A stretch of 64,000 nt of DNA from the IMG/VR virus record IMGVR_UViG_3300036770_003943, positions 62,001-126,000 of that record. One strand, given 5' to 3'. Position 1 is the first letter of the stretch. The number at the start of each line of letters is the position of its first letter. Made by a program: the position numbers and the translations under genes. Shown here piece by piece: positions 5,560 to 64,000 of the stretch. The notes under the pieces are model-generated. The model worked only from the letters and a program-made list of their open reading frames with translations. It did not search any database and was not told the DNA's origin.

Positions 5560-8500
5560 GATAAAAACATCGAATAAGCATTGGCTGATGAACTCGATCC
5601 ACCTCCACCTGTAGCACTAATCGTCACGCTACCTGTACCAGCACTTACGCTAATTCCACTTCCTGCTGTGATGCTAGTTACACCGCTGTTAGCTATAGTT
5701 ACAGCCGTTGAACCGTTATAACTGGTTCCAGATAAACCTGTGCCTATTGTTAATGTTGCTAGATTGTTCCCAAGCGTAATACCTGAAATAGTACTGGCTG
5801 CTAACTTACTAACTGCTATGGCAGCACTGGCATTGATATCACTATTTACAATAGTTCCATCGGCTATCATAGTACTAGTAACTGTTCCAGTATCCCCGGT
5901 AGTTACTAATGTACCAGTAGTAGCAGGAATAGTTACAATTACTCCAGAGCCTGCAGTTGATGTGGCTTTAAGATTTAAACTACCGCTAGTAGAGCCACTT
6001 AGGTTTAGGCCGCCTCCGCCGATTGTTGGGGTAGTTAGGCTAGGACTATTGGCAAACACTAATGCTCCGCTGCCAGTTTCATCACTGATTACACCGGCTA
6101 ATTCAGCGCTGGTTGTAGCAGACAACGCACTTAATTTATTACTAGTATAAACAACCGTGCCGCCAGTACCAAATGCAACCGAACTGCCATCAGTGCCAGT
6201 AAATGTCAGTGTATTACTGGCCGTTAAAGTTTTTCCATCCGCTATAGTTAATGTAGATCCAGTTGCTGGTGCTGTAATTGACACTTTGTTAATGCTTGTG
6301 GCACTAGCAACACCTAATGTTGGAGTAACTAAAGTCGGACTAGTTGCTAATACTATTGCTCCTGAACCAGTGGTTCCATTACTTAAATTAGCAGCAGAAA
6401 TTTGACTACCATTAATATGTACTGCGCCTACATCAATAGTTCCTAATGTTCCTGAAACAACTTCGGAAGAAATACTAGCATCAGGAACGAAAATAAACTT
6501 ACCTGTACTGTCATCAAAACCAAAAAAACCAATCTTAGCAGTGCTACCGTTATGCCATTGGAATGAAATACCTCTATCTTTATTGTCGTCGGTTACTGGT
6601 GCTGCGCCTCCAGTAGAACCTCCTATATCAATAATAGGATCAACTATCGTACTTACTGTAGAATTGACTGTGGTAGTTGTGCCGCTAACAGTTAGATTTC
6701 CACCGACTATCACATTTCCAGAGGTGCTTATACCTGCCGCATTAACTGTGCCTGTTAAAGTAGGACTATTGGCAAACACTAATGCTCCGCTGCCAGTTTC
6801 ATCACTGATTACACTGGCTAATTCAGCACTGGTTGTAGCAGCGAAATCGCTTAGTTTATTACTTGTATATGCTACTGTGCCGCCAGTACCAAATGCAACC
6901 GAACTGCCATCAGTGCCAGTAAATGTCAGTGTATTACTGGCCGTTAAAGTTTTTCCATCCGCTATAGTTAATGTAGATCCAGTTGCTGGTTCTGTAATTG
7001 CTAATTTATTAATACTTGTAGCACTAGCAACACCTAATATTGGGGTAATTAGACTAGGACTATTGGCAAACACTAATGCTCCGCTGCCAGTTTCATCACT
7101 GATTACACTGGCTAATTCAGCACTGGTTGTAGCAGAGAAATCGCTTAATTTATTGCTAGTTAAGGCTACTGTTCCTGAACTATCTTGAATTGTTAATGTC
7201 CTAGTTGTTCCAGTTGTAATTCCTGAAAGTTGAAATTGTAATTTTTTAGTTGCGTCTCCGTCGTCGGCAAAATAGGTAGTACTATCTTGTAGTGTTTTAT
7301 TTGTTAGAGTTTGTACTCCGTCTGTAGTTACAACCGTATTATCAATAGCTATGGTTATTCCAGTACTACCATTGTAGCTAGTACCTGACAGGCCTGTACC
7401 AATGGTTAAGGCATTTAGATTATTGCCTAATGTTACACCAGAAATTGTGTTAGCCGCTAGTTTACTTACTTCAATAGCAGCAGTAGTACTAATATCAGCA
7501 TTGACTATACTACCAGTTAGGTTTAATTTGCTATAAGCAATCGCAGCACTGGCATTTACATCAGCATTGACTATACCATCAGTTAGGTTTAATTTGCTAT
7601 AAGCAATCGCAGCACTGGCATTTACATCAGCATTGACTATAGTCCCATCTTCGATCATAGTACTGGTAACTGATCCTGTATCGCCTGTAGTAACTACAGT
7701 ACCAGTTGTAGCTGGAAATGTTATTGTATTAGTACCGGCTATAGCTGCAGCTGATAATGTAATAGTTCCACTAGTACTTCCGTTTAATAATAAATTTTTA
7801 CCGGCCGCTAACGCTAAATGTTCGCTACTAGTCCAAGCATCGGTGGCATCAATCCAATTAAATGTTTTATCTGTAGCGCCTTTTAATGTAATACCACCAC
7901 CATCTGCTGTAGTATCTGTTGGTGTGGCAACATCTCCCAATACAATGTTTTTATCATCTACGCTTATAGTTGTAGAATTAATTGTAGTGGTTGTACCATT
8001 AACTGTAAGATCTCCGCTTACTGTAAGATTATTAAAGGTAACATTATCTGTTGTTGCTACTGGTTGACCGATCGCTATGCTGCCACTGGTGATTGTCACA
8101 CCAGTGCCTGCTGTAAAATGAGCACGAACTTCGCTGGCACTTGGGCCAGTGTAGGTAATTACACCAGTCGAGCTATCATATGATAACGATCCATCTCCAC
8201 CGGCATCAGTTACACTGATTGCTGCTCTAGCATCACTGTCGGTATATTGTGTTATTGAACTAGCAAAAGAAATACTTTTCGGAGAAGCACTGGCGTTAGT
8301 AGTAATTGTCATTCCACTGCCAGCTACAAACTCAACTGTGTCCAATCCTGATGCTACTAAACTAGTTTGACCAGCAACTTGCCATGTTTTAAATGTGCTG
8401 TTCATTAAAATTTTCACAGCGCCACTACCTAAATCAACTACATCAAAACCCGAATCAGTGTCAAATCTAATAGCATTAACGCCAGAAATTTCCCCCGATA

Positions 8501-58871: not shown

Positions 58872-59714
58872 ATGGAAAATCAAAGCAACCCGTTAAAAAA
58901 TTATTTTAGAAAACCGGGTATATGGATCAAGTTACCTAGTCTAGGAAAGTTTTATAAAGACAAGCCGTTGGAGTTAAATGAAATGGGGGAAGTACCTGTC
59001 TACCCAATGACAGCAAAAGATGAACTCTTAATGAAAAATGCCGATGCTCTATTAAATGGCACAGCAGTAACACAGCTTATTCGAAGTTGCGTTCCTTGTA
59101 TACAAGACCCAGAAAGTATGCCCAGTATTGATCTTGATGCTCTGTTATTAGCCATACGTAGATCTACTTACGGAGAAAACATGGATGTTAGCACCCAACA
59201 TGACTGTCAAGCTAATGCTACCACTGATTCAACACTTAATTTAAATGCTTTTATCAGCACAATCAAAACCATAGACAGTTTCGATCCAGTAGAATTAGAA
59301 AACAAAATTAAAGTATTCGTAAAACCTGTCAGTGTAAAACAATTATTACAGTTGAATTGGATTCAGTACGAACAGATTAGAAATCTACAAATAGCTGAAC
59401 AACAGAATCTCGACGAAAAATCAAAAGTGAATATTTTACAAAACAGTTATATTTTGCTGACACAGACTAATTTGGAAATCATAAGCCAGTGTATCGAAAC
59501 TGTACTACTTCCAGACAGTATCACAGTAACTGATCCAGGATCGATACTTGAATGGGTTCAAGATCTTGATAGCCCTACATTTAAATTAATTGAAAACGCA
59601 GTAATGTCTTTGGGCAGCAAAGGAGTTGAAAAGAAGTTCCAAGTAACCTGTAGTAAGTGTAACAAAAACTATGAAACCGAACTGAATTTAAACCCAACAA
59701 CTTTTTTCGGATAA
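58872..59714 (+). CDS. gp26: baseplate hub subunit/assembly protein (gp26-like)
   Basis: NPLKNYFRKP.I.IKLPS.G.FY, PMTAKDELL, ID.DALLLAIRR.TYG, CxxC near C-terminus, NPTTFFG. Confidence 0.75.
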   Translation: MENQSNPLKNYFRKPGIWIKLPSLGKFYKDKPLELNEMGEVPVYPMTAKDELLMKNADALLNGTAVTQLIRSCVPCIQDPESMPSIDLDALLLAIRRSTYGENMDVSTQHDCQANATTDSTLNLNAFISTIKTIDSFDPVELENKIKVFVKPVSVKQLLQLNWIQYEQIRNLQIAEQQNLDEKSKVNILQNSYILLTQTNLEIISQCIETVLLPDSITVTDPGSILEWVQDLDSPTFKLIENAVMSLGSKGVEKKFQVTCSKCNKNYETELNLNPTTFFG

Positions 59715-59719
59715 GGCTT

Positions 59720-59953
59720 TTGTCCCTACGTTCGGGGCCTGAAATTCTAAAGTTACTAGATAATTTAGAAAAAGAGACAAAAGCCATCATTGAAGATATA
59801 GCTACTATGGCCGTATACAGTGGACAAAGTTATCATGAATTATGGCACTTAACCAACGACGAACGCAGAATATTCCTTAAGATATTACAGAGCAAAATTA
59901 GTCTAGAAAGAGGCATAAAACCCAAAGACGTTATTACCCAGGAATTACGTTAA
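59720..59953 (+). CDS. small baseplate-hub-associated protein (gp51-like by position; TTG start)
   Basis: 77-aa ORF coupled to the gp26-like gene; YHELWHL...ER.IFL. Confidence 0.55.
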   Translation: MSLRSGPEILKLLDNLEKETKAIIEDIATMAVYSGQSYHELWHLTNDERRIFLKILQSKISLERGIKPKDVITQELR

Positions 59954-59960
59954 AGTTTTA

Positions 59961-60034
59961 AGTTGTTCATAGAACAACTAAGAATCGTGTTTTATTCACT
60001 TCGGCTCTAAAACACGATTCTTTTTATTCTTTCT
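59961..60034 (+). terminator. tandem hairpins/terminator for the plus-strand hub operon
   Basis: AGTTGTTC-ATA-GAACAACT (59961-59979); perfect 15-bp stem AAGAATCGTGTTTTA/TAAAACACGATTCTT (59980-60022) followed by a T-rich run. Confidence 0.75.
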
Positions 60035-60060
60035 TTACTGTCGAACACTTTAGTTTAGAG

Positions 60061-60465
60061 GTATAGCTTGCCAAGGTTTTGAAGTCGTACTTTGCCCTGT
60101 TAGGGGCAAAAGTAAAAAAATAACTTGCCGGAGGCCCATTATCGTAATCTATCGCTGCAACTTTTAAAGTAAGGGCGGTTACGCTGTACCCTTTTACGCA
60201 GTCCTTATAATAACGCAGAATCAAACCAGCTGATAGATGAACCAGTTTGCTCATGTGGGTTAGAATGACTCACTAGTGCCCACTCTTTTTTGACTATACA
60301 TACACTTGCCAGCGTCTTTCAAGTCTAACGCTTCGTCCCGTCATCAACGGGATAGTGGCAATCATGTCTCCGCTACCGCTCGGAATTTCCTACCCTGCGA
60401 CATCACCAGGGATTCGGGCACCTTAATCAACTTGCCGGTGCGGGCATTATCGGTAGTGCTTGGAC
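60061..60465 (-). ncRNA. candidate large structured non-coding RNA (or origin-like DNA element); family unassigned, strand inferred
   Basis: No credible ORF; 54% GC by hand count over 60301-60460; at least 6 hairpins; bipartite direct repeat near both ends. Confidence 0.5.
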
Positions 60466-60894
60466 CTAGATTTTGCCAATAATATGGGAGCCGTGAACTC
60501 TTAGATTAATAATGTTGTTATAGTAGTCGGGAGATTCTAATACACGTCTGTTGAATTGTTCTTTTGCTTCGAGATATGAGCAGACTGCTTTGCTAGAGCC
60601 ATAATAGAGTATTTCGCGGATAAATTTGTCGGGACCTAGGGCAGCAACGTCCTTTTTTAGTTCTTCGCTGCTGCCCCAATATTCTTGCCAATCGCTGTCT
60701 ATTTTAGATTTTATACGTTTGCGTTTTTTAGTGCCGTTTTTGAGTTTTATAGTTTTGTAAGTTGTTTTAGAGAATTTTGCCAGTTTTTTGCCAATATACA
60801 TACGGCCTGTGATCGTATTGGTAATACAATAAACATATCCAACACAGTCGTTGGGAAGTTGTTCTACTAGTTTACCTTCAAATACCCATGTCAT
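60466..60894 (-). CDS. short single-domain GIY-YIG family endonuclease
   Basis: GYVYCITN..TGRMYIGKK, YWGSS, F.REIL, YLE, YYN. Confidence 0.85.
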   Translation of the reverse strand: MTWVFEGKLVEQLPNDCVGYVYCITNTITGRMYIGKKLAKFSKTTYKTIKLKNGTKKRKRIKSKIDSDWQEYWGSSEELKKDVAALGPDKFIREILYYGSSKAVCSYLEAKEQFNRRVLESPDYYNNIINLRVHGSHIIGKI

Positions 60895-61094
60895 TTAACT
60901 GACATAGCTGCCTTTTCCTCAGTAATCTCTTTACGTCGAGCCTTAACTAATTTGGCAACTTCCTGTAATGCTTTACGAGCTCTACCCGCAGCCGCCTTTA
61001 CTTTTTTATCAGTAAATTTTTGATTTTCTTCAATGTATACTTGAAATTGTCGTACTAATTCTTCTTGAGTGTTTACTGGTGTTTGTTCTGTCAT
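60891..61094 (-). CDS. histone H1-like (Hc1-like) small basic DNA-binding protein
   Basis: KF.DKKVKAAAGRARKALQEVAKLVKARRKEI. Confidence 0.7.
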   Translation of the reverse strand: MTEQTPVNTQEELVRQFQVYIEENQKFTDKKVKAAAGRARKALQEVAKLVKARRKEITEEKAAMSVK

Positions 61095-61095
61095 A

Positions 61096-62871
61096 TTATG
61101 CCTCTATCATTTCAATATCAGTATTATAGGTAGTAAATCCATTTTCTTTTACTACCTGTAGTATGCTATTTACTCGTCCTATCAGTTCATCTCGGTGACT
61201 AATTAAGAAAATATTCTTTCTACTTTCCCGACTCATTTTCTTTAGCAAGCCCAGAGCATTCTCTACTCCAGAAGAATCCAACCCGCTGTCAATCATCTCA
61301 TCAATGAACAGCAGGTTAATAGGATGGTTTAGACTTTCATATACATCTCTAAATGCCCAGCTTAGGCCTAGAATAAGTCGATTACGTTCGCCCCTGCTAA
61401 GATTGTCGAAATCAAACTCTTGTCCTAGCTGAGTAATATCTACTTCTAGATCACTACGAAATTTAACCTCGTGCGGTAATGCTAGTTTCTCTAAGTAGTA
61501 GGCTAGTCTGTGGTTAAGGTAACTAAGATTTTGTTCAATGATACGTTTTCGAATAAAACTGTCTTTGTTGGTTAAGAGTTTTAATAGAAACTCTTGGTGC
61601 TCATTTAGCTTAGTTAACGCATTAATGCTCTCGAAATTAATTTCTTCAAGGGCCGTTGTTTGAAGGCTTTCAATTTGTTCTATATAAGGATCCAAGTCTA
61701 GCATTCTACGTTCGAACTGATCCTGTGCTGTTTCTAAAGTACTTTTATGGTTGACTGCGTCATCGATGTTTGGATATTTGACCTTAGGACCAGAACCTAA
61801 TTTGCCTATCTCTTTGATGCGGTCATCTAATTGTAGCAGCAGTCGTTCTTCGGTGCCTAATTCTTTTTCTAAATCATGTATGGCAGATTTTATTTCATAG
61901 GTCATTTCTTGCTGTTGACTATCATGTAGTTCATGACCACAAGCATGACATTTGTGATCCTCAGCCTTGGATAATGCTCGTTGTAAGTCTGCGATATTTT
62001 GATTTAGCTTCCTACAATTGCTAGTATGCTGCGCTAGATCCTTATTATACTGCTTTAGTTCTTTTTCAGTTTGTTGCCATTTAGTTAATAGCTTATGATT
62101 TTCAAGTTCTTGTTGAATGTCGATGTTTAATAGTTCGTTTATAGTAGCTTCAAGTTTTTCAATATCTTCTTCCTGTTTGGCCTGCCAAAGACGACTACGA
62201 CGTTCGAGATCCTCAATAGATTTTTTAACTTTATTGTTTGCATCTGTTACTGCCTTTATTCGATATTCTTCTTCTTTAATTTGATCTTTGGTATTTTTGA
62301 TTAGTTCTTTCAATAGGTCAGCCTTTTGACTTAACTGTGTTATACCTAAGAGTTGTTCAATAATGCTACGTTGATCATTTGTTTTTAGACTTAAAAAAGG
62401 TTCAGTGTAGGTATTAAGAGCACAGATGTGCTTGAACATGTCATGACCTACTCCTAGTAAACGCTCAATTTCAGCCTGAGTTTCTCTATTTTCTCCCTGC
62501 TGTTCCTCGGTTTCTTCTTTATTGTATTCTTTATTATCCATAATAAAACGTAATACATTAGGTTTGCGTCCACGTTCTATTTTGTAGCTATGACCATTTG
62601 ATTCTAGTTCACAGGTAACTAACATGTTTTTATTATTGGTCTTATTAATGAGATTATCTTTTTTAATGTTAGTCAAGGCGTTGCCATATAGTACATAGCT
62701 AAGAGCATTTACTATAGTAGTTTTGCCTGTGCCATTGCGACTACCATCTCCACCTAGGTCGAGATTATTGCCTAACACCAATGTTAGGCCGCTTTGATCA
62801 AACTTCAAAGCCTGGGTTACATTGCCCACAGAAAGAAAGTTACGTACTGTTAAGTTTTTTATACGGATCAT
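61096..62871 (-). CDS. gp46: recombination endonuclease ATPase subunit (gp46/SbcC/Rad50-like; likely start MIRIKNL at 62871)
   Basis: Walker A NGTGKTT, zinc hook CHAC, signature LSRGERNR, Walker B LFIDE, H-loop ISH. Confidence 0.93.
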   Translation of the reverse strand: MIRIKNLTVRNFLSVGNVTQALKFDQSGLTLVLGNNLDLGGDGSRNGTGKTTIVNALSYVLYGNALTNIKKDNLINKTNNKNMLVTCELESNGHSYKIERGRKPNVLRFIMDNKEYNKEETEEQQGENRETQAEIERLLGVGHDMFKHICALNTYTEPFLSLKTNDQRSIIEQLLGITQLSQKADLLKELIKNTKDQIKEEEYRIKAVTDANNKVKKSIEDLERRSRLWQAKQEEDIEKLEATINELLNIDIQQELENHKLLTKWQQTEKELKQYNKDLAQHTSNCRKLNQNIADLQRALSKAEDHKCHACGHELHDSQQQEMTYEIKSAIHDLEKELGTEERLLLQLDDRIKEIGKLGSGPKVKYPNIDDAVNHKSTLETAQDQFERRMLDLDPYIEQIESLQTTALEEINFESINALTKLNEHQEFLLKLLTNKDSFIRKRIIEQNLSYLNHRLAYYLEKLALPHEVKFRSDLEVDITQLGQEFDFDNLSRGERNRLILGLSWAFRDVYESLNHPINLLFIDEMIDSGLDSSGVENALGLLKKMSRESRKNIFLISHRDELIGRVNSILQVVKENGFTTYNTDIEMIEA

Positions 62872-62878
62872 AATTTTA

Positions 62879-63898
62879 TTATACAGTAAGACTGTTGTAA
62901 ATGTCAACGAGAATTTGACGATCGACTACATCGCTTTCGATAGAACTTAGTTGTTTTATGACTATTTGATCTACACTTTCAAAATGTATATCACCGCTCC
63001 AATCTTGTGCGTGTTCTTCTTGTTTGGATGGGATCAAACTGAGTTCTCGGAGATTAAATGTTTCCTGCCAAGTTTCTTTTAAAAAGTTAGCTTCTTCAAA
63101 ACTAATATCAGCGTCACAGGTTACACGAAGAAAAGTATTTTTATTCATATAACGATCAGGGTCTTCGATCAATTTTGTTAGATTAATTGTTTTAAAACTA
63201 GGAGCATCAGGCCATGCTATGTATTCGGGTTCTTTATCCCATTCAAATATCATCATACCACGATTGTCATCCCACGCATCGGCATAATTATGGGGGAAAG
63301 CATTGCCTATATAGTGAACATTGCCTCTCTGCTGCCTTAGGTGAAAGTGTCCACTGAATACATATTCTTGATTAGGAAAATGATTAGAATTTAGGCCACC
63401 ATGATCAGGCATTTCTACCATGGCATTCATTTTAAAACTAGGTAGTTCAAAGTGTCCAAAAACATAACGACTGTCTAGTCGAGACATTTTAGTCCATTCA
63501 TCGCTTACAAGCCAAGGAACAAGACTAACCCCACCTTCAGAGTAGATTTCGTTTACCAAAACTACGTTATTTAAATGTCTAATAAACGGTAAACTATTTA
63601 AATCACGACGTTCTCGATAGTATAAGTCATGGTTACCAGGAATGAAAAAGAAACGCTCGAAGTGTTGACTAATATACTCTATGGCGTTAACAGTGTAATT
63701 CAGTGTACTGACGTTGACAGTGGCACGATGGTGATGCCAATCCCCTTGAAATATAGCAGTGTCGCAATCATGTTTATTAGCAGTTTCACAGAACCATTTA
63801 ACGAACTCCATACAGTCGTCGTTATGTGCTTTACTGTTTTGACGCATGCCAAAATGTATATCTGTAAATACTGCAGCTCGTTTAAACAATTGACTCAT
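62879..63898 (-). CDS. gp47: recombination endonuclease nuclease subunit (gp47/SbcD/Mre11-like)
   Basis: Phosphoesterase motifs TDIHFG, GDWHH, GNHD, SGHFH. Confidence 0.93.
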   Translation of the reverse strand: MSQLFKRAAVFTDIHFGMRQNSKAHNDDCMEFVKWFCETANKHDCDTAIFQGDWHHHRATVNVSTLNYTVNAIEYISQHFERFFFIPGNHDLYYRERRDLNSLPFIRHLNNVVLVNEIYSEGGVSLVPWLVSDEWTKMSRLDSRYVFGHFELPSFKMNAMVEMPDHGGLNSNHFPNQEYVFSGHFHLRQQRGNVHYIGNAFPHNYADAWDDNRGMMIFEWDKEPEYIAWPDAPSFKTINLTKLIEDPDRYMNKNTFLRVTCDADISFEEANFLKETWQETFNLRELSLIPSKQEEHAQDWSGDIHFESVDQIVIKQLSSIESDVVDRQILVDIYNSLTV

Positions 63899-64000
63899 CA
63901 ATAATCCTCTGTCTTTAGATTGGCTATACGTTCTCTTTCGTCACGCATCATGGCTTCGTGTTCGAATTGACGAGTAAAGCTGGGGTTGCTTCCTAGTTCA
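63898..64000 (-). CDS. partial CDS (C-terminus), probably the late-transcription sigma factor (gp55-like)
   Basis: Frame reads ELGSNPSFTRQFEHEAMMRDERERIANLKTEDY*; TGA overlaps the gp47 ATG; 55-47-46 order is typical of T4-like phages. Confidence 0.4.
   Translation of the reverse strand, partial: ELGSNPSFTRQFEHEAMMRDERERIANLKTEDY

What the first reader, a model, noticed from the sequence alone, without database searches (positions are those of the whole stretch)
60122..60894. Minimal GIY-YIG nuclease abutting the structured RNA: candidate RNA-associated nuclease system
Seen: the 142-aa protein is essentially only the catalytic domain plus a basic insert (KTIKLKNGTKKRKRIKSK), with no separate DNA-recognition domain. 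The first repeat lies 14 nt after its stop codon. Known: HEARO, IscB and TnpB pair compact nucleases with adjacent structured RNAs, while GIY-YIG homing enzymes normally carry extra DNA-binding domains. Speculative inference: the RNA acts as scaffold, guide or antitoxin, or the nuclease nicks or processes the repeats (e.g. for origin priming). Chance adjacency and a T4 EndoII-like host-DNA nuclease role remain possible.
Basis: inference. Interest (0 to 1): 0.68.

Follow-up and report, generated by a model that had tools for sequence, protein, structure and literature searches.

The report
Minimal phage nuclease beside known RNA
A real, one-domain GIY-YIG DNA-cutting enzyme gene sits directly in front of a 0.5-kb structured RNA of a known but unexplained family (Polynucleobacter-1); the pairing is conserved in uncultured freshwater phages, but the evidence points to a selfish "homing-type" nuclease gene parked next to an RNA gene rather than to an RNA-guided nuclease.

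Summary
ORF 60466-60894(-) is a 142-aa protein that is only a SegE-type GIY-YIG domain, and its basic insert is a family-wide beta-hairpin. The repeat-bearing RNA starts 13-14 nt after the stop codon.

The RNA is a member of Rfam RF01718 (Polynucleobacter-1). Here it extends to about 0.5 kb and fills the whole intergenic gap.

The adjacency is not chance:
- About 87-92% of related metagenomic phage loci keep nuclease and RNA together, on the same strand and abutting.
- Weinberg et al. (2010) already noted that the RNA lies downstream of this gene family (GOS11034/PSSM2_218).

Each part also exists alone:
- 495 cultured-phage records carry the nuclease; none has blastn-detectable RNA.
- 36 of the 37 RNA-bearing Burkholderiales loci carry the RNA inside integrative elements, with no nuclease.
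- Six phage loci have a PD-(D/E)xK nuclease in the same slot.

No guide-like variable segment exists in the RNA. The nuclease ORF is unusually similar at synonymous sites between phages whose flanking genes are saturated, which suggests homing-like spread.

Best reading: an RNA-independent, Seg-like DNA nuclease gene linked to the RNA gene at the DNA and transcript level, as with T4 SegB and tRNA genes. An RNA-protein complex (RNP) is not excluded (about 0.13).

The parts
60466..60894 (-). 142-aa single-domain SegE-type GIY-YIG endonuclease gene
   Evidence: Pfam PF19835 full length, E 6e-30. PHROG 447, E 3e-34. AF2 pLDDT 93.5. VIA-align Z 8.3 to the I-TevI catalytic domain 1ln0. Invariant G19, Y22, Y33, G35, R93, E109, N126 in 49 homologues.
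60697..60777 (-). Codons 40-66: long basic beta-hairpin arm (contains KTIKLKNGTKKRKRIKSK) inserted in the GIY-YIG fold
   Evidence: DSSP strands 40-50 and 56-66 in the AF2 model. Only 82 residues of the model align to I-TevI, which leaves room for the arm as an insert; this is inferred, not shown residue by residue. The arm is conserved in RNA-linked and RNA-less homologues alike; K57 is invariant.
60302..60446 (-). 5' domain of the RNA = Rfam RF01718 Polynucleobacter-1
   Evidence: cmscan 55 bits against gathering 37, model positions 1-141 of 141. Covarying helices.
59956..60301 (-). Conserved 3' 'tail' domain of the same RNA, with the near-invariant core GGTACAGCGTAACCGCC at 60190-60174 and the hairpin 60111-60090
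   Evidence: An nhmmer profile of relatives matches 60458-59962. Conservation and covariation continue to the 3' hairpins. Weinberg's alignment has a 'tail' subfamily.
60429..60452 (-). First copy of the ~24-nt direct repeat (C)GATAATG..CCGGCAAGTT; it starts 13-14 nt after the stop codon and includes the first hairpin (P1) loop
   Evidence: Read from the sequence. The repeat finder family D9. GGCAAG at 60436-60431.
60122..60146 (-). Second copy of the direct repeat. Further GGCAAG motifs lie at 60310-60305 and 60072-60067.
   Evidence: In the main clade the equivalent sites read GGCTAAT/GGATAAT.
59980..60022 (.). Perfect 15-bp inverted repeat at the 3' end of the RNA, between convergent transcription units. 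On the minus strand it is followed by a second hairpin at 59984-59956.
   Evidence: the repeat finder I1 (100% complementary) and I7. T-run on the plus strand.
60891..61094 (-). Context: Hc1 histone-H1-like gene whose stop overlaps the nuclease start (ATGA). It is the last ORF of the tightly packed gp47-gp46-Hc1-GIY string that the RNA terminates.
   Evidence: Pfam PF07432, E 2e-10. ORF coordinates. The same order is found in most related loci.

Best explanation
The ORF encodes an active, RNA-independent DNA endonuclease of the Seg/I-TevI type, reduced to the catalytic domain plus a basic beta-hairpin arm. Its gene behaves like a free-standing homing-type (selfish or domesticated) nuclease gene.

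That gene has settled immediately upstream of an autonomous ~0.5-kb structured-RNA gene (Polynucleobacter-1, 5' domain plus conserved tail).

The link between the two is at the level of the DNA locus and the transcript:
- The RNA lies at the 3' end of the gp47-gp46-Hc1-GIY string and is probably read through from it.
- The conserved RNA gene supplies a stable landing or target neighbourhood.
- The nuclease promotes inheritance of itself, and often of the adjoining RNA allele, in mixed infections, as T4 SegB does for the tRNA cluster.

Shown: the identity of both parts, their conserved adjacency, their separability, and the excess synonymous similarity of the nuclease ORF.

Inferred: nuclease activity, DNA as the substrate, co-transcription, and homing.
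For: (1) Identity. The protein matches SegE_GIY-YIG over its full length, its nearest fold is the I-TevI catalytic domain (Z 8.3), and the catalytic residues are invariant.

(2) Linkage.
- Of 80 loci found through the protein, 67 have the RNA abutting on the same strand, 10 lack it and 3 are cut off by a contig end.
- Of 110 testable loci found through an RNA motif, 93 have the nuclease within -13 to +150 nt and 8 have it further upstream.
- Of 41 window-type RNAs, 38 have the nuclease adjacent.
- The immediate flanks vary while the junction is kept.

(3) Separability.
- The nuclease occurs without the RNA in Melnitz, V45v66, ACP17, C48C1 and P-SSM2.
- One nested clade of 10 close homologues also lacks the RNA.
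- Of the 37 RNA-bearing Burkholderiales loci, 36 lack the nuclease. There the RNA lies beside a DUF6641 gene and tyrosine recombinase genes.
- The RNA also occurs in other phage contexts.

(4) Slot turnover. A PD-(D/E)xK endonuclease (PF24608) replaces the GIY-YIG gene in six loci and never co-occurs with it. Homing endonuclease gene (HEG) turnover at favoured loci is described in PMC10055350.

(5) Homing-like signature.
- Window against its nearest relative L274: identity at 4-fold degenerate sites is 70% in the nuclease gene, against 44% in gp46, 41% in gp47 and 29% in the hub gene.
- In 27 of 4574 pairs the nuclease gene is >=0.8 identical at 4-fold sites while the adjacent gp46 is saturated. 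The same test gives 0 of 2129 pairs for gp47 and 0 of 1977 for the hub gene, and no pair shows the reverse.
- The high-identity block starts at the nuclease start codon and usually runs through the RNA.
- In 25 pairs the nuclease gene is >=88% identical while the RNA is <78%; the reverse never occurs.
- L140 holds a truncated copy.

(6) Precedent. SegB in the T4 tRNA cluster is a homing endonuclease (PMC2330249). segB co-localises with tRNA genes (p 1e-50) and acts on DNA (PMC13096335).

(7) There is no promoter-like site between the stop codon and the RNA start, and the ORFs overlap or abut.
Against: - There is no separate DNA-binding domain, which characterised homing endonucleases have. The basic hairpin or oligomerisation would have to supply binding.
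- No empty site (Hc1 directly followed by the RNA) was seen in the roughly 150 loci whose upstream gene could be read. The gene is near-fixed here, and the family is single-copy in 495 cultured-phage records, mostly cyanomyoviruses. That looks more like a housekeeping gene than a sporadic HEG.
- Excess synonymous identity could partly reflect nucleotide-level constraint inside the ORF, for example signals for RNA expression.
- The contigs are metagenomic assemblies.
- No cleavage site is known.
- Conservation of the tight junction over nuclease divergence down to 34% identity would also fit a functional partnership.
Confidence: 0.5

Rival explanations
1. RNA-protein system. The Polynucleobacter-1 RNA binds the domain-only nuclease through the basic hairpin. 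It then acts as scaffold, targeting module or inhibitor. The PD-(D/E)xK enzyme is an interchangeable effector.
For: - Tight same-strand junction kept in 87-92% of loci, across nuclease identities of 34-74% and despite variable flanks.
- No DNA-binding domain, but a basic arm.
- A second nuclease fold in the same slot, mutually exclusive with the first.
- Four co-varying GGCAAG-type motifs could be protein-binding sites.
Against: - Both parts are common without the other.
- RNA-less homologues keep an unchanged arm and unchanged invariant residues.
- There is no run of 8 or more low-information columns in the RNA core, so no guide-like segment.
- In 25 pairs the nuclease is near-identical while the RNA has diverged to 60-78%, so the two do not coevolve tightly.
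- To my knowledge no GIY-YIG enzyme has been reported as RNA-dependent (not searched here).
Confidence: 0.13
2. Plain conserved synteny. The two are unrelated neighbours (a housekeeping nuclease, such as an EndoII-like DNA nickase, and an independent ncRNA). They stay together only because the RNA depends on read-through transcription, or because the lineage is young.
For: - The general neighbourhood gp47-gp46-...-hub is shared.
- The ORF string is operon-like and no promoter is detected before the RNA.
- The family is near-universal in cultured T4-like cyanophages.
- EndoII is structurally related, Z 5.4.
Against: - Immediate flanks are reshuffled by many different small ORFs, yet the junction survives.
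- Excess synonymous similarity is specific to the nuclease ORF, which simple vertical descent does not predict.
- The slot is replaced by a different nuclease.
Confidence: 0.25
3. RNA-level relation. The nuclease matures the RNA from the long transcript, or the RNA is an antitoxin to a toxic nuclease (type III TA-like).
For: The RNA lies in the same transcript direction directly after the ORF, and it carries repeated motifs.
Against: - Known type III systems have tandem RNA repeats upstream of an endoribonuclease toxin. Here the RNA is downstream, is not tandem, and occurs once per locus.
- The RNA exists with its own divergent promoter region and without the nuclease in bacteria.
- The nuclease exists without the RNA in hundreds of phages.
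- The GIY-YIG fold is a DNase fold.
Confidence: 0.05
4. Chance adjacency or an artefact.
For: None beyond the single window.
Against: The adjacency is reproduced in more than 190 independent metagenomic loci found from either side. It was also noted independently in 2010.
Confidence: 0.01

Closest known systems
Polynucleobacter-1 RNA motif (Rfam RF01718; Weinberg et al. 2010, PMC2864571)
   Same: - The 5' domain scores above the gathering threshold.
- The tail sequences seen in Weinberg's alignment are present here.
- The RNA lies downstream of the GOS11034/PSSM2_218 gene family, as that paper's supplement states.
   Different: The paper found it in no sequenced phage and did not say what the upstream gene is. 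Here:
- the RNA sits in an uncultured myovirus next to gp46/gp47;
- the upstream gene is a SegE-type GIY-YIG nuclease;
- the element is about 0.5 kb;
- the bacterial copies sit in integrative elements.
T4 SegB and the tRNA gene cluster (PMC2330249; PMC13096335)
   Same: A Seg-family GIY-YIG nuclease gene is embedded beside structured-RNA genes in a myovirus. The relation acts on DNA (homing, preferred inheritance, amplification). Co-localisation is statistically strong.
   Different: - SegB carries a DNA-binding part; this protein does not.
- The neighbour here is one large ncRNA of unknown function, not tRNAs.
- No tandem amplification was seen.
- Homing is inferred here, not demonstrated.
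I-TevI / SegE catalytic domains
   Same: Best structural match (Z 8.3, rmsd 2.7 over 82 residues) and full-length Pfam SegE_GIY-YIG match.
   Different: This protein lacks the linker, Zn finger and HTH DNA-binding module. It carries a 27-residue basic beta-hairpin insert.
T4 endonuclease II (DenA, PDB 2wsh)
   Same: A small stand-alone GIY-YIG phage nuclease of similar size. In Melnitz and C48C1 the homologue lies after nrd genes, where denA lies in T4 (recalled from memory, not checked here).
   Different: Weaker structural match (Z 5.4), no sequence-level match, and a different type of insert.
OMEGA/HEARO systems (IscB, TnpB with omega RNA)
   Same: A compact nuclease gene abuts a structured RNA in a mobile context.
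   Different: - The nuclease fold differs (GIY-YIG, not RuvC/HNH).
- There is no guide-like variable end.
- The parts are not obligately paired.
- No transposon ends were looked for or noticed.

Membership tests
GIY-YIG superfamily / Pfam SegE_GIY-YIG (PF19835) | Profile match above the curated cut-off over the whole domain | tested here: met
   104 bits against a cut-off of 25; residues 3-129 against profile 1-123 of 123.
GIY-YIG superfamily / Pfam SegE_GIY-YIG (PF19835) | GIY and YIG motifs plus conserved Arg, Glu and Asn of the active site | tested here: met
   G19-Y-V-Y22, Y33-I-G35, R93, E109 and N126 are invariant in 49 homologues. Assigning them to catalytic roles is by homology.
GIY-YIG superfamily / Pfam SegE_GIY-YIG (PF19835) | GIY-YIG alpha/beta fold | tested here: met
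   AF2 pLDDT 93.5. Z 8.3 to I-TevI, 6.9 to PD-T4-3, 5.7 to UvrC-N, 5.4 to EndoII.
Free-standing homing endonuclease (Seg type) | Separate DNA-binding domain joined to the nuclease domain | tested here: not met
   The Pfam domain fills the protein, and only a beta-hairpin insert is added.
Free-standing homing endonuclease (Seg type) | Gene younger or more exchanged than its flanks, and turnover at the site | tested here: met
   Excess identity at 4-fold sites is specific to this ORF. PD-(D/E)xK replaces it in six loci. One truncated copy, L140.
Free-standing homing endonuclease (Seg type) | Sporadic presence, with empty sites in relatives | tested here: inconclusive
   No clean empty site was found. 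The RNA lacks the nuclease in about 8% of the 110 testable RNA-found loci, and in four of those nine another nuclease fills the slot.
Free-standing homing endonuclease (Seg type) | Site-specific cleavage of nuclease-less alleles and gene conversion | not testable with these tools
   Needs enzyme assays and phage crosses.
Polynucleobacter-1 RNA (RF01718) | Covariance-model score at or above the gathering score | tested here: met
   55 bits against 37, full model.
Polynucleobacter-1 RNA (RF01718) | Located downstream of a GOS11034/PSSM2_218-family gene | tested here: met
   The upstream protein is 35% identical to PSSM2_218, E 9e-20.
RNA-guided nucleases of OMEGA/HEARO type | Variable guide segment at one end of a conserved scaffold | tested here: not met
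   No run of 8 or more low-information columns with at least 70% occupancy. The variable parts are length-variable hairpins.
RNA-guided nucleases of OMEGA/HEARO type | Nuclease and RNA obligately paired; RuvC and/or HNH nuclease | tested here: not met
   Each part occurs alone. The fold is GIY-YIG.
Type III toxin-antitoxin (ToxIN-like) | Tandem RNA repeats upstream of an endoribonuclease toxin | tested here: not met
   The RNA is downstream, occurs once per locus and is not an array of units.
T4 EndoII (DenA) orthologue | Specific sequence or structural similarity beyond the shared fold | tested here: inconclusive
   No phmmer hit to 2wsh. Z 5.4, which is lower than to I-TevI.

The most novel reading that the evidence does not exclude
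The Polynucleobacter-1 RNA and the nuclease encoded just upstream form a ribonucleoprotein. The nuclease is usually a domain-only GIY-YIG enzyme and occasionally a PD-(D/E)xK enzyme. In this reading the large RNA recruits, positions or gates a nuclease that has no DNA-binding domain. That would be a new class of RNA-associated nuclease used by freshwater (jumbo) phages. A related RNA in host integrative elements would work with other partners (DUF6641, a small tyrosine recombinase).
Probability: 0.13. Interest if true: 0.85.

Novelty: new member of a known kind. Interest (0 to 1): 0.5.

Why it matters
Polynucleobacter-1 has been an orphan structured RNA since 2010. This window places it in a phage genome and names its habitual upstream neighbour as a minimal GIY-YIG nuclease, a family widely mis-annotated as 'NAD synthetase'.

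The work also shows three further things:
- The RNA is about 0.5 kb long, with a 3' core that is at least as well conserved as the 5' domain.
- Homologous RNAs sit in integrative elements of the likely host group (freshwater Burkholderiales).
- The nuclease ORF has a homing-like evolutionary signature.

Together these give concrete, cheap experiments for two open questions. What do large orphan phage RNAs do? How can a GIY-YIG domain with no DNA-binding module find its substrate?

If the homing reading is right, the case extends the SegB-tRNA principle (nuclease genes guarding or spreading RNA loci) to a new RNA class and to uncultured freshwater phages.

Tried and rejected
- blastn (distant mode) of 59950-60900 against 50,697 phage records: no match.
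- ARAGORN: no tRNA or tmRNA in the window.
- Rfam at E<=10 around the locus: only RF01718 is credible, and there is no second Rfam-detectable copy. The 'second repeat' is part of the same RNA's tail.
- phmmer against PDB sequences: nothing. Foldseek E-values were all above 0.1, so VIA-align was needed.
- EndoII as the closest relative: rejected, because I-TevI is closer.
- Promoter and terminator consensus scan: not above the shuffled expectation.
- Guide-like hypervariable segment: none found.
- Tandem amplification of the RNA, as with SegB: none found.
- Coding potential of the RNA region: none conserved.
- DUF6641, the bacterial neighbour of the RNA:
  - absent from the phage loci;
  - the AF2 model gave only helix-level matches, Z<=5, which is uninformative.
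- PADLOC and NCBIfam for the nuclease, the PD-(D/E)xK protein and the island genes: no defence-system assignment.
- The look-up of encoding contigs, used to look for the RNA elsewhere in a genome of the RNA-less clade: it returned only a 1.7-kb contig. Whether those phages carry the RNA at another place therefore stays open.
- The careful treekit search did not finish, so the quick IQ-TREE tree was used.
- Complex prediction was not used. It takes proteins only, and no protein-protein claim is made.

The forward and reverse locus sets overlap in some contigs, so the counts are not independent.
Full report
**What is in the window.** The minus strand carries a tightly packed string of genes:
- gp47/SbcD-like, 62879-63901;
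- gp46/SbcC-like, 61096-62907;
- an Hc1 histone-H1-like gene, 60891-61094;
- the 142-aa ORF, 60466-60894.

The start of the 142-aa ORF overlaps the Hc1 stop (ATGA). Convergent baseplate genes lie on the plus strand. The 512-nt gap between the two gene sets (59954-60465) holds no tRNA.

The ORF is a full-length match to Pfam SegE_GIY-YIG (residues 3-129 against profile 1-123 of 123, E 6e-30). It also matches PHROG 447, a family of ~140-aa stand-alone phage proteins labelled 'NAD synthetase'.

An AF2 model built on 49 homologues is confident (pLDDT 93.5). It shows the basic stretch KTIKLKNGTKKRKRIKSK as part of a long beta-hairpin, strands 40-50 and 56-66. The whole-PDB structural search gave these best matches:
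- I-TevI catalytic domain, Z 8.3, rmsd 2.7 over 82 residues;
- the GIY-YIG restriction enzyme PD-T4-3, Z 6.9;
- UvrC N-terminal domain, Z 5.7;
- T4 EndoII, Z 5.4.

G19, Y22, Y33, G35, R93, E109 and N126 are invariant.

**The RNA.**
- Rfam finds one family above threshold in the whole window: RF01718, Polynucleobacter-1, at 60446-60302(-), 55 bits against a gathering score of 37.
Its first copy (60452-60429) starts 13-14 nt after the stop codon. Its second copy is at 60146-60122.
- GGCAAG occurs four times in the 504-nt RNA, against 20 times on that strand in all 64 kb.
- Alignment with relatives shows that conservation does not stop at the Rfam model. It continues for another ~350 nt, through a near-invariant core (GGTAC-N6-ACCGCC, 60190-60174) to terminal hairpins at 60022-59956.
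- On 93 non-redundant sequences RNAalifold predicts 100 pairs in 19 helices. Of these, 62 show changes on both sides.
- The region holds no conserved ORF; the median longest ORF is 42 aa.

The whole intergenic gap is thus one ~0.5-kb structured RNA. The 'tail' in Weinberg's original alignment corresponds to its 3' part.

**What was already known.** The only paper in the library that names the motif is Weinberg et al. 2010. Its supplement says three things:
- most Polynucleobacter-1 RNAs lie downstream of genes of family GOS11034;
- that family has possible homology to PSSM2_218 of cyanophage P-SSM2;
- the motif was detected in no sequenced phage.

PSSM2_218 is annotated 'NAD synthetase'. It is 35% identical to the window protein (E 9e-20). 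The gene-RNA association is therefore known. The nature of the gene, and the fact that the element lives in phages, were not stated.

**Co-occurrence, searched from both sides.**

From the protein. The search for related loci returned 80 IMG/VR loci at 64-74% identity.
- Rfam finds RF01718 in 17 of the first 20, on the same strand; in 15 it starts 10-40 nt after the stop codon, the other two lying ~90 nt and ~1 kb downstream.
- An nhmmer profile of the long RNA finds it in 67 of the 80.
- Three loci are cut off by the contig end.
- Ten loci lack the RNA. In these the nuclease gene overlaps the start of a membrane-protein gene.

From the RNA.
- The core pattern of the main clade gave 119 loci, all with the RNA. 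Of these, 110 have room upstream:
  - 93 have the nuclease at -13 to +150 nt on the same strand;
  - 8 have it 159-876 nt upstream, because of inserted ORFs or a divergent 5' domain;
  - 9 have none.
- The window-type core pattern gave 51 loci. Of the 41 with nhmmer hits, 38 have the nuclease adjacent.

Nuclease identity to the window protein in RNA-linked loci ranges from 34% to 94%.

The wider neighbourhood (gp47-gp46 ... baseplate hub) is shared. The immediate flanks differ: Hc1, radical-SAM genes and others lie upstream, and more than twenty different small ORFs lie downstream. The nuclease-RNA junction persists through this. Chance adjacency is excluded.

The forward and reverse locus sets overlap in some contigs, so the counts are not independent.

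**Separability.** tblastn finds the nuclease family in 495 cultured-phage records, mostly cyanomyoviruses, one place per record, all below 60% identity.
- The closest are Melnitz (47%), V45v66, ACP17 and C48C1. In the three annotated records (Melnitz, ACP17, C48C1) other genes follow within 0-148 nt, and none of the four has an RNA hit even at relaxed thresholds.
- P-SSM2 has no RNA hit either.
- The RNA region has no blastn match in any cultured phage.

In a quick tree:
- the ten RNA-less close homologues form one clade (support 92) nested among RNA-linked ones;
- Melnitz is sister to an RNA-linked group.

These look like losses or relocations.

Conversely, a scan of one genome per prokaryotic species found the RNA 5' core in 39 loci. 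They come from Polynucleobacter, Limnohabitans and other freshwater Burkholderiales, and include complete chromosomes.
- 37 loci carry the RNA by nhmmer.
- Only one carries the nuclease: a 1.3-kb MAG contig that looks like phage.
- In the bacterial loci the RNA lies between a divergently oriented DUF6641 gene (29 loci) and a 188-aa tyrosine recombinase gene. A clamp-loader-like ATPase and a 424-aa integrase lie nearby. This is an integrative mobile element.

Four further phage loci carry the RNA in unrelated contexts. RNA-less nuclease homologues keep the basic hairpin and all invariant residues.

**A second nuclease in the same slot.** In L099, L094, L187, L192, L268 and L265 the gene directly upstream of the RNA is a PF24608 'phage putative PDDEXK endonuclease' (E 2.5e-29). 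In L094 and L187 an RNase H gene lies between it and the RNA.
- No locus has both nuclease types.
- The 64-kb window has no PDDEXK_15 gene.

**Search for a guide.** Per-column information across the 453 well-occupied columns shows no run of 8 or more poorly conserved positions. The variable parts are length-variable hairpins, many capped by UUCG-type loops. This argues against an OMEGA/CRISPR-like guide.

**Evolutionary signature of the nuclease ORF.**

Window against its nearest relative, L274:
- The GIY-RNA block is the most similar stretch, at 80-89% nucleotide identity. gp46, Hc1 and gp47 mostly run 57-85% and the hub gene 56-68%.
- Identity at 4-fold degenerate sites is 70% in the nuclease gene (n=46). 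It is 44% in gp46, 41% in gp47 and 29% in the hub gene.

Across 112 loci (4574 pairs):
- In 27 pairs the nuclease 4-fold identity is >=0.8 while the adjacent gp46 is saturated (<0.6). No pair shows the reverse.
- The same test gives 0 of 2129 pairs for gp47 and 0 of 1977 for the hub gene.
- In five such pairs the block of high identity begins at the nuclease start codon (Hc1 is only 25-76% identical). It runs through the RNA and ends at the RNA 3' end.
- In 25 pairs the nuclease gene is >=88% identical while the RNA is only 60-78%. The reverse never occurs.

The nuclease ORF, often together with the RNA, therefore has a more recent common ancestry than its flanks. A homing-type gene that spreads by gene conversion would leave this pattern. 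One locus (L140) has a truncated nuclease fused to an RNA that lacks its first ~100 nt.

**Interpretation.** The closest mechanistic precedent is T4 SegB.
- SegB is a Seg-family GIY-YIG homing endonuclease whose gene lies inside the tRNA cluster. It secures preferential inheritance of that region (PMC2330249).
- segB homologues co-localise with tRNA genes across myoviruses (p 1e-50). They act on DNA and amplify adjacent RNA or anti-defence loci (PMC13096335).
- Different classes of homing endonuclease gene (HEG) at the same favoured loci, and HEG turnover, are described for other phages. So is the rule that HEGs pair a nuclease domain with a DNA-binding domain (PMC10055350).

I therefore favour this reading (0.5): an RNA-independent Seg-like DNA nuclease gene lodged at the 5' edge of an autonomous RNA gene. 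It is co-transcribed with the RNA and promotes inheritance of itself and often of the RNA allele.

Weak points of this reading:
- the missing DNA-binding domain;
- the absence of empty sites;
- the core-gene-like distribution of the family.

Rivals:
- plain synteny, 0.25;
- an RNA-processing or antitoxin relation, 0.05.

**Provenance of the window.** The nearest cultured gp46 is that of the Pseudomonas jumbo phage PA5oct, at 52%. Several related IMG/VR contigs are 200-345 kb. The RNA's bacterial relatives are in freshwater Burkholderiales. The window is most likely from an uncultured, possibly jumbo, freshwater myovirus of betaproteobacteria. This is an inference.

**Verdict.**
- The element is a new member of a known RNA family next to a known type of gene.
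- Several new descriptive facts and one open, testable novel possibility remain.

Noticed in passing
L204-L242 (e.g. L236 5669-5837; L211 3797-3926; L226 6327-6482): Homologues of the RNA 5' domain lie in chromosomes of Polynucleobacter, Limnohabitans and Comamonadaceae, inside integrative elements. A divergent DUF6641/phrog_31551 gene lies 110-260 nt upstream (29 loci). A 188-aa tyrosine recombinase, a clamp-loader-like ATPase and a 424-aa integrase lie downstream. No nuclease is present. Some genomes hold two copies. Phage and host mobile elements share this RNA.
   Followed up: partly
L099 3963-4484; also L094, L187, L192, L265, L268: A PF24608 PD-(D/E)xK endonuclease gene occupies the slot directly upstream of the RNA in place of the GIY-YIG gene, and the two are mutually exclusive. 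In L094 and L187 an RNase H gene (PF00075) lies between it and the RNA.
   Followed up: partly
window 60891-61094 (-): A 67-aa Hc1 (chlamydial histone-H1-like, PF07432, E 2e-10) gene lies between gp46 and the nuclease gene, and its stop overlaps the nuclease start (ATGA). It is conserved in about 100 related loci. It is much less conserved at nucleotide level than the nuclease gene next to it.
   Followed up: partly
phage records under (e.g. NC_006883 176711-177148, PSSM2_218): The whole family of ~140-aa SegE-type GIY-YIG proteins (PHROG 447, T4-GC 213) is annotated 'NAD synthetase' in many phage records. This looks like a propagated mis-annotation.
   Followed up: partly
L088 4164-5153 (-); L029 1399-2970 (+) and about 50 other loci: In many related phages radical-SAM/SPASM and B12-binding radical-SAM genes lie between gp46 and the nuclease gene, in place of or in addition to Hc1. 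The region is a plastic accessory-gene slot.
   Followed up: no
window 60436-60431, 60310-60305, 60129-60124, 60072-60067 (-): The four GGCAAG(T/C) motifs of the window RNA correspond to GGCTAAT/GGATAAT motifs at the same positions in the main clade. The repeated motif therefore changes in concert between clades. It may be a common binding site or a tertiary contact.
   Followed up: partly
window 58872-59714 (+): The baseplate-hub (gp26-like) protein has a weak, below-threshold hit to the CapR Zn-finger homology domain at its C-terminus (residues 248-274, CxxC..C pattern, E 0.003).
   Followed up: no
L140 (IMGVR_UViG_3300008111_000023) about 6528-7252: A truncated nuclease gene (residues 1-121) runs straight into an RNA that lacks its first ~100 nt. 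A single deletion spans the junction, so this is a decaying copy.
   Followed up: no
L100, L162, L196: A 151-aa nuclease variant is only 34-37% identical to the window protein and resembles the P-SSM2 cyanophage protein at its N-terminus. It is still followed, ~90-140 nt downstream, by the RNA 3' domain with a different 5' domain. The 3' domain is the part nhmmer still detects in the most loci, including these.
   Followed up: partly
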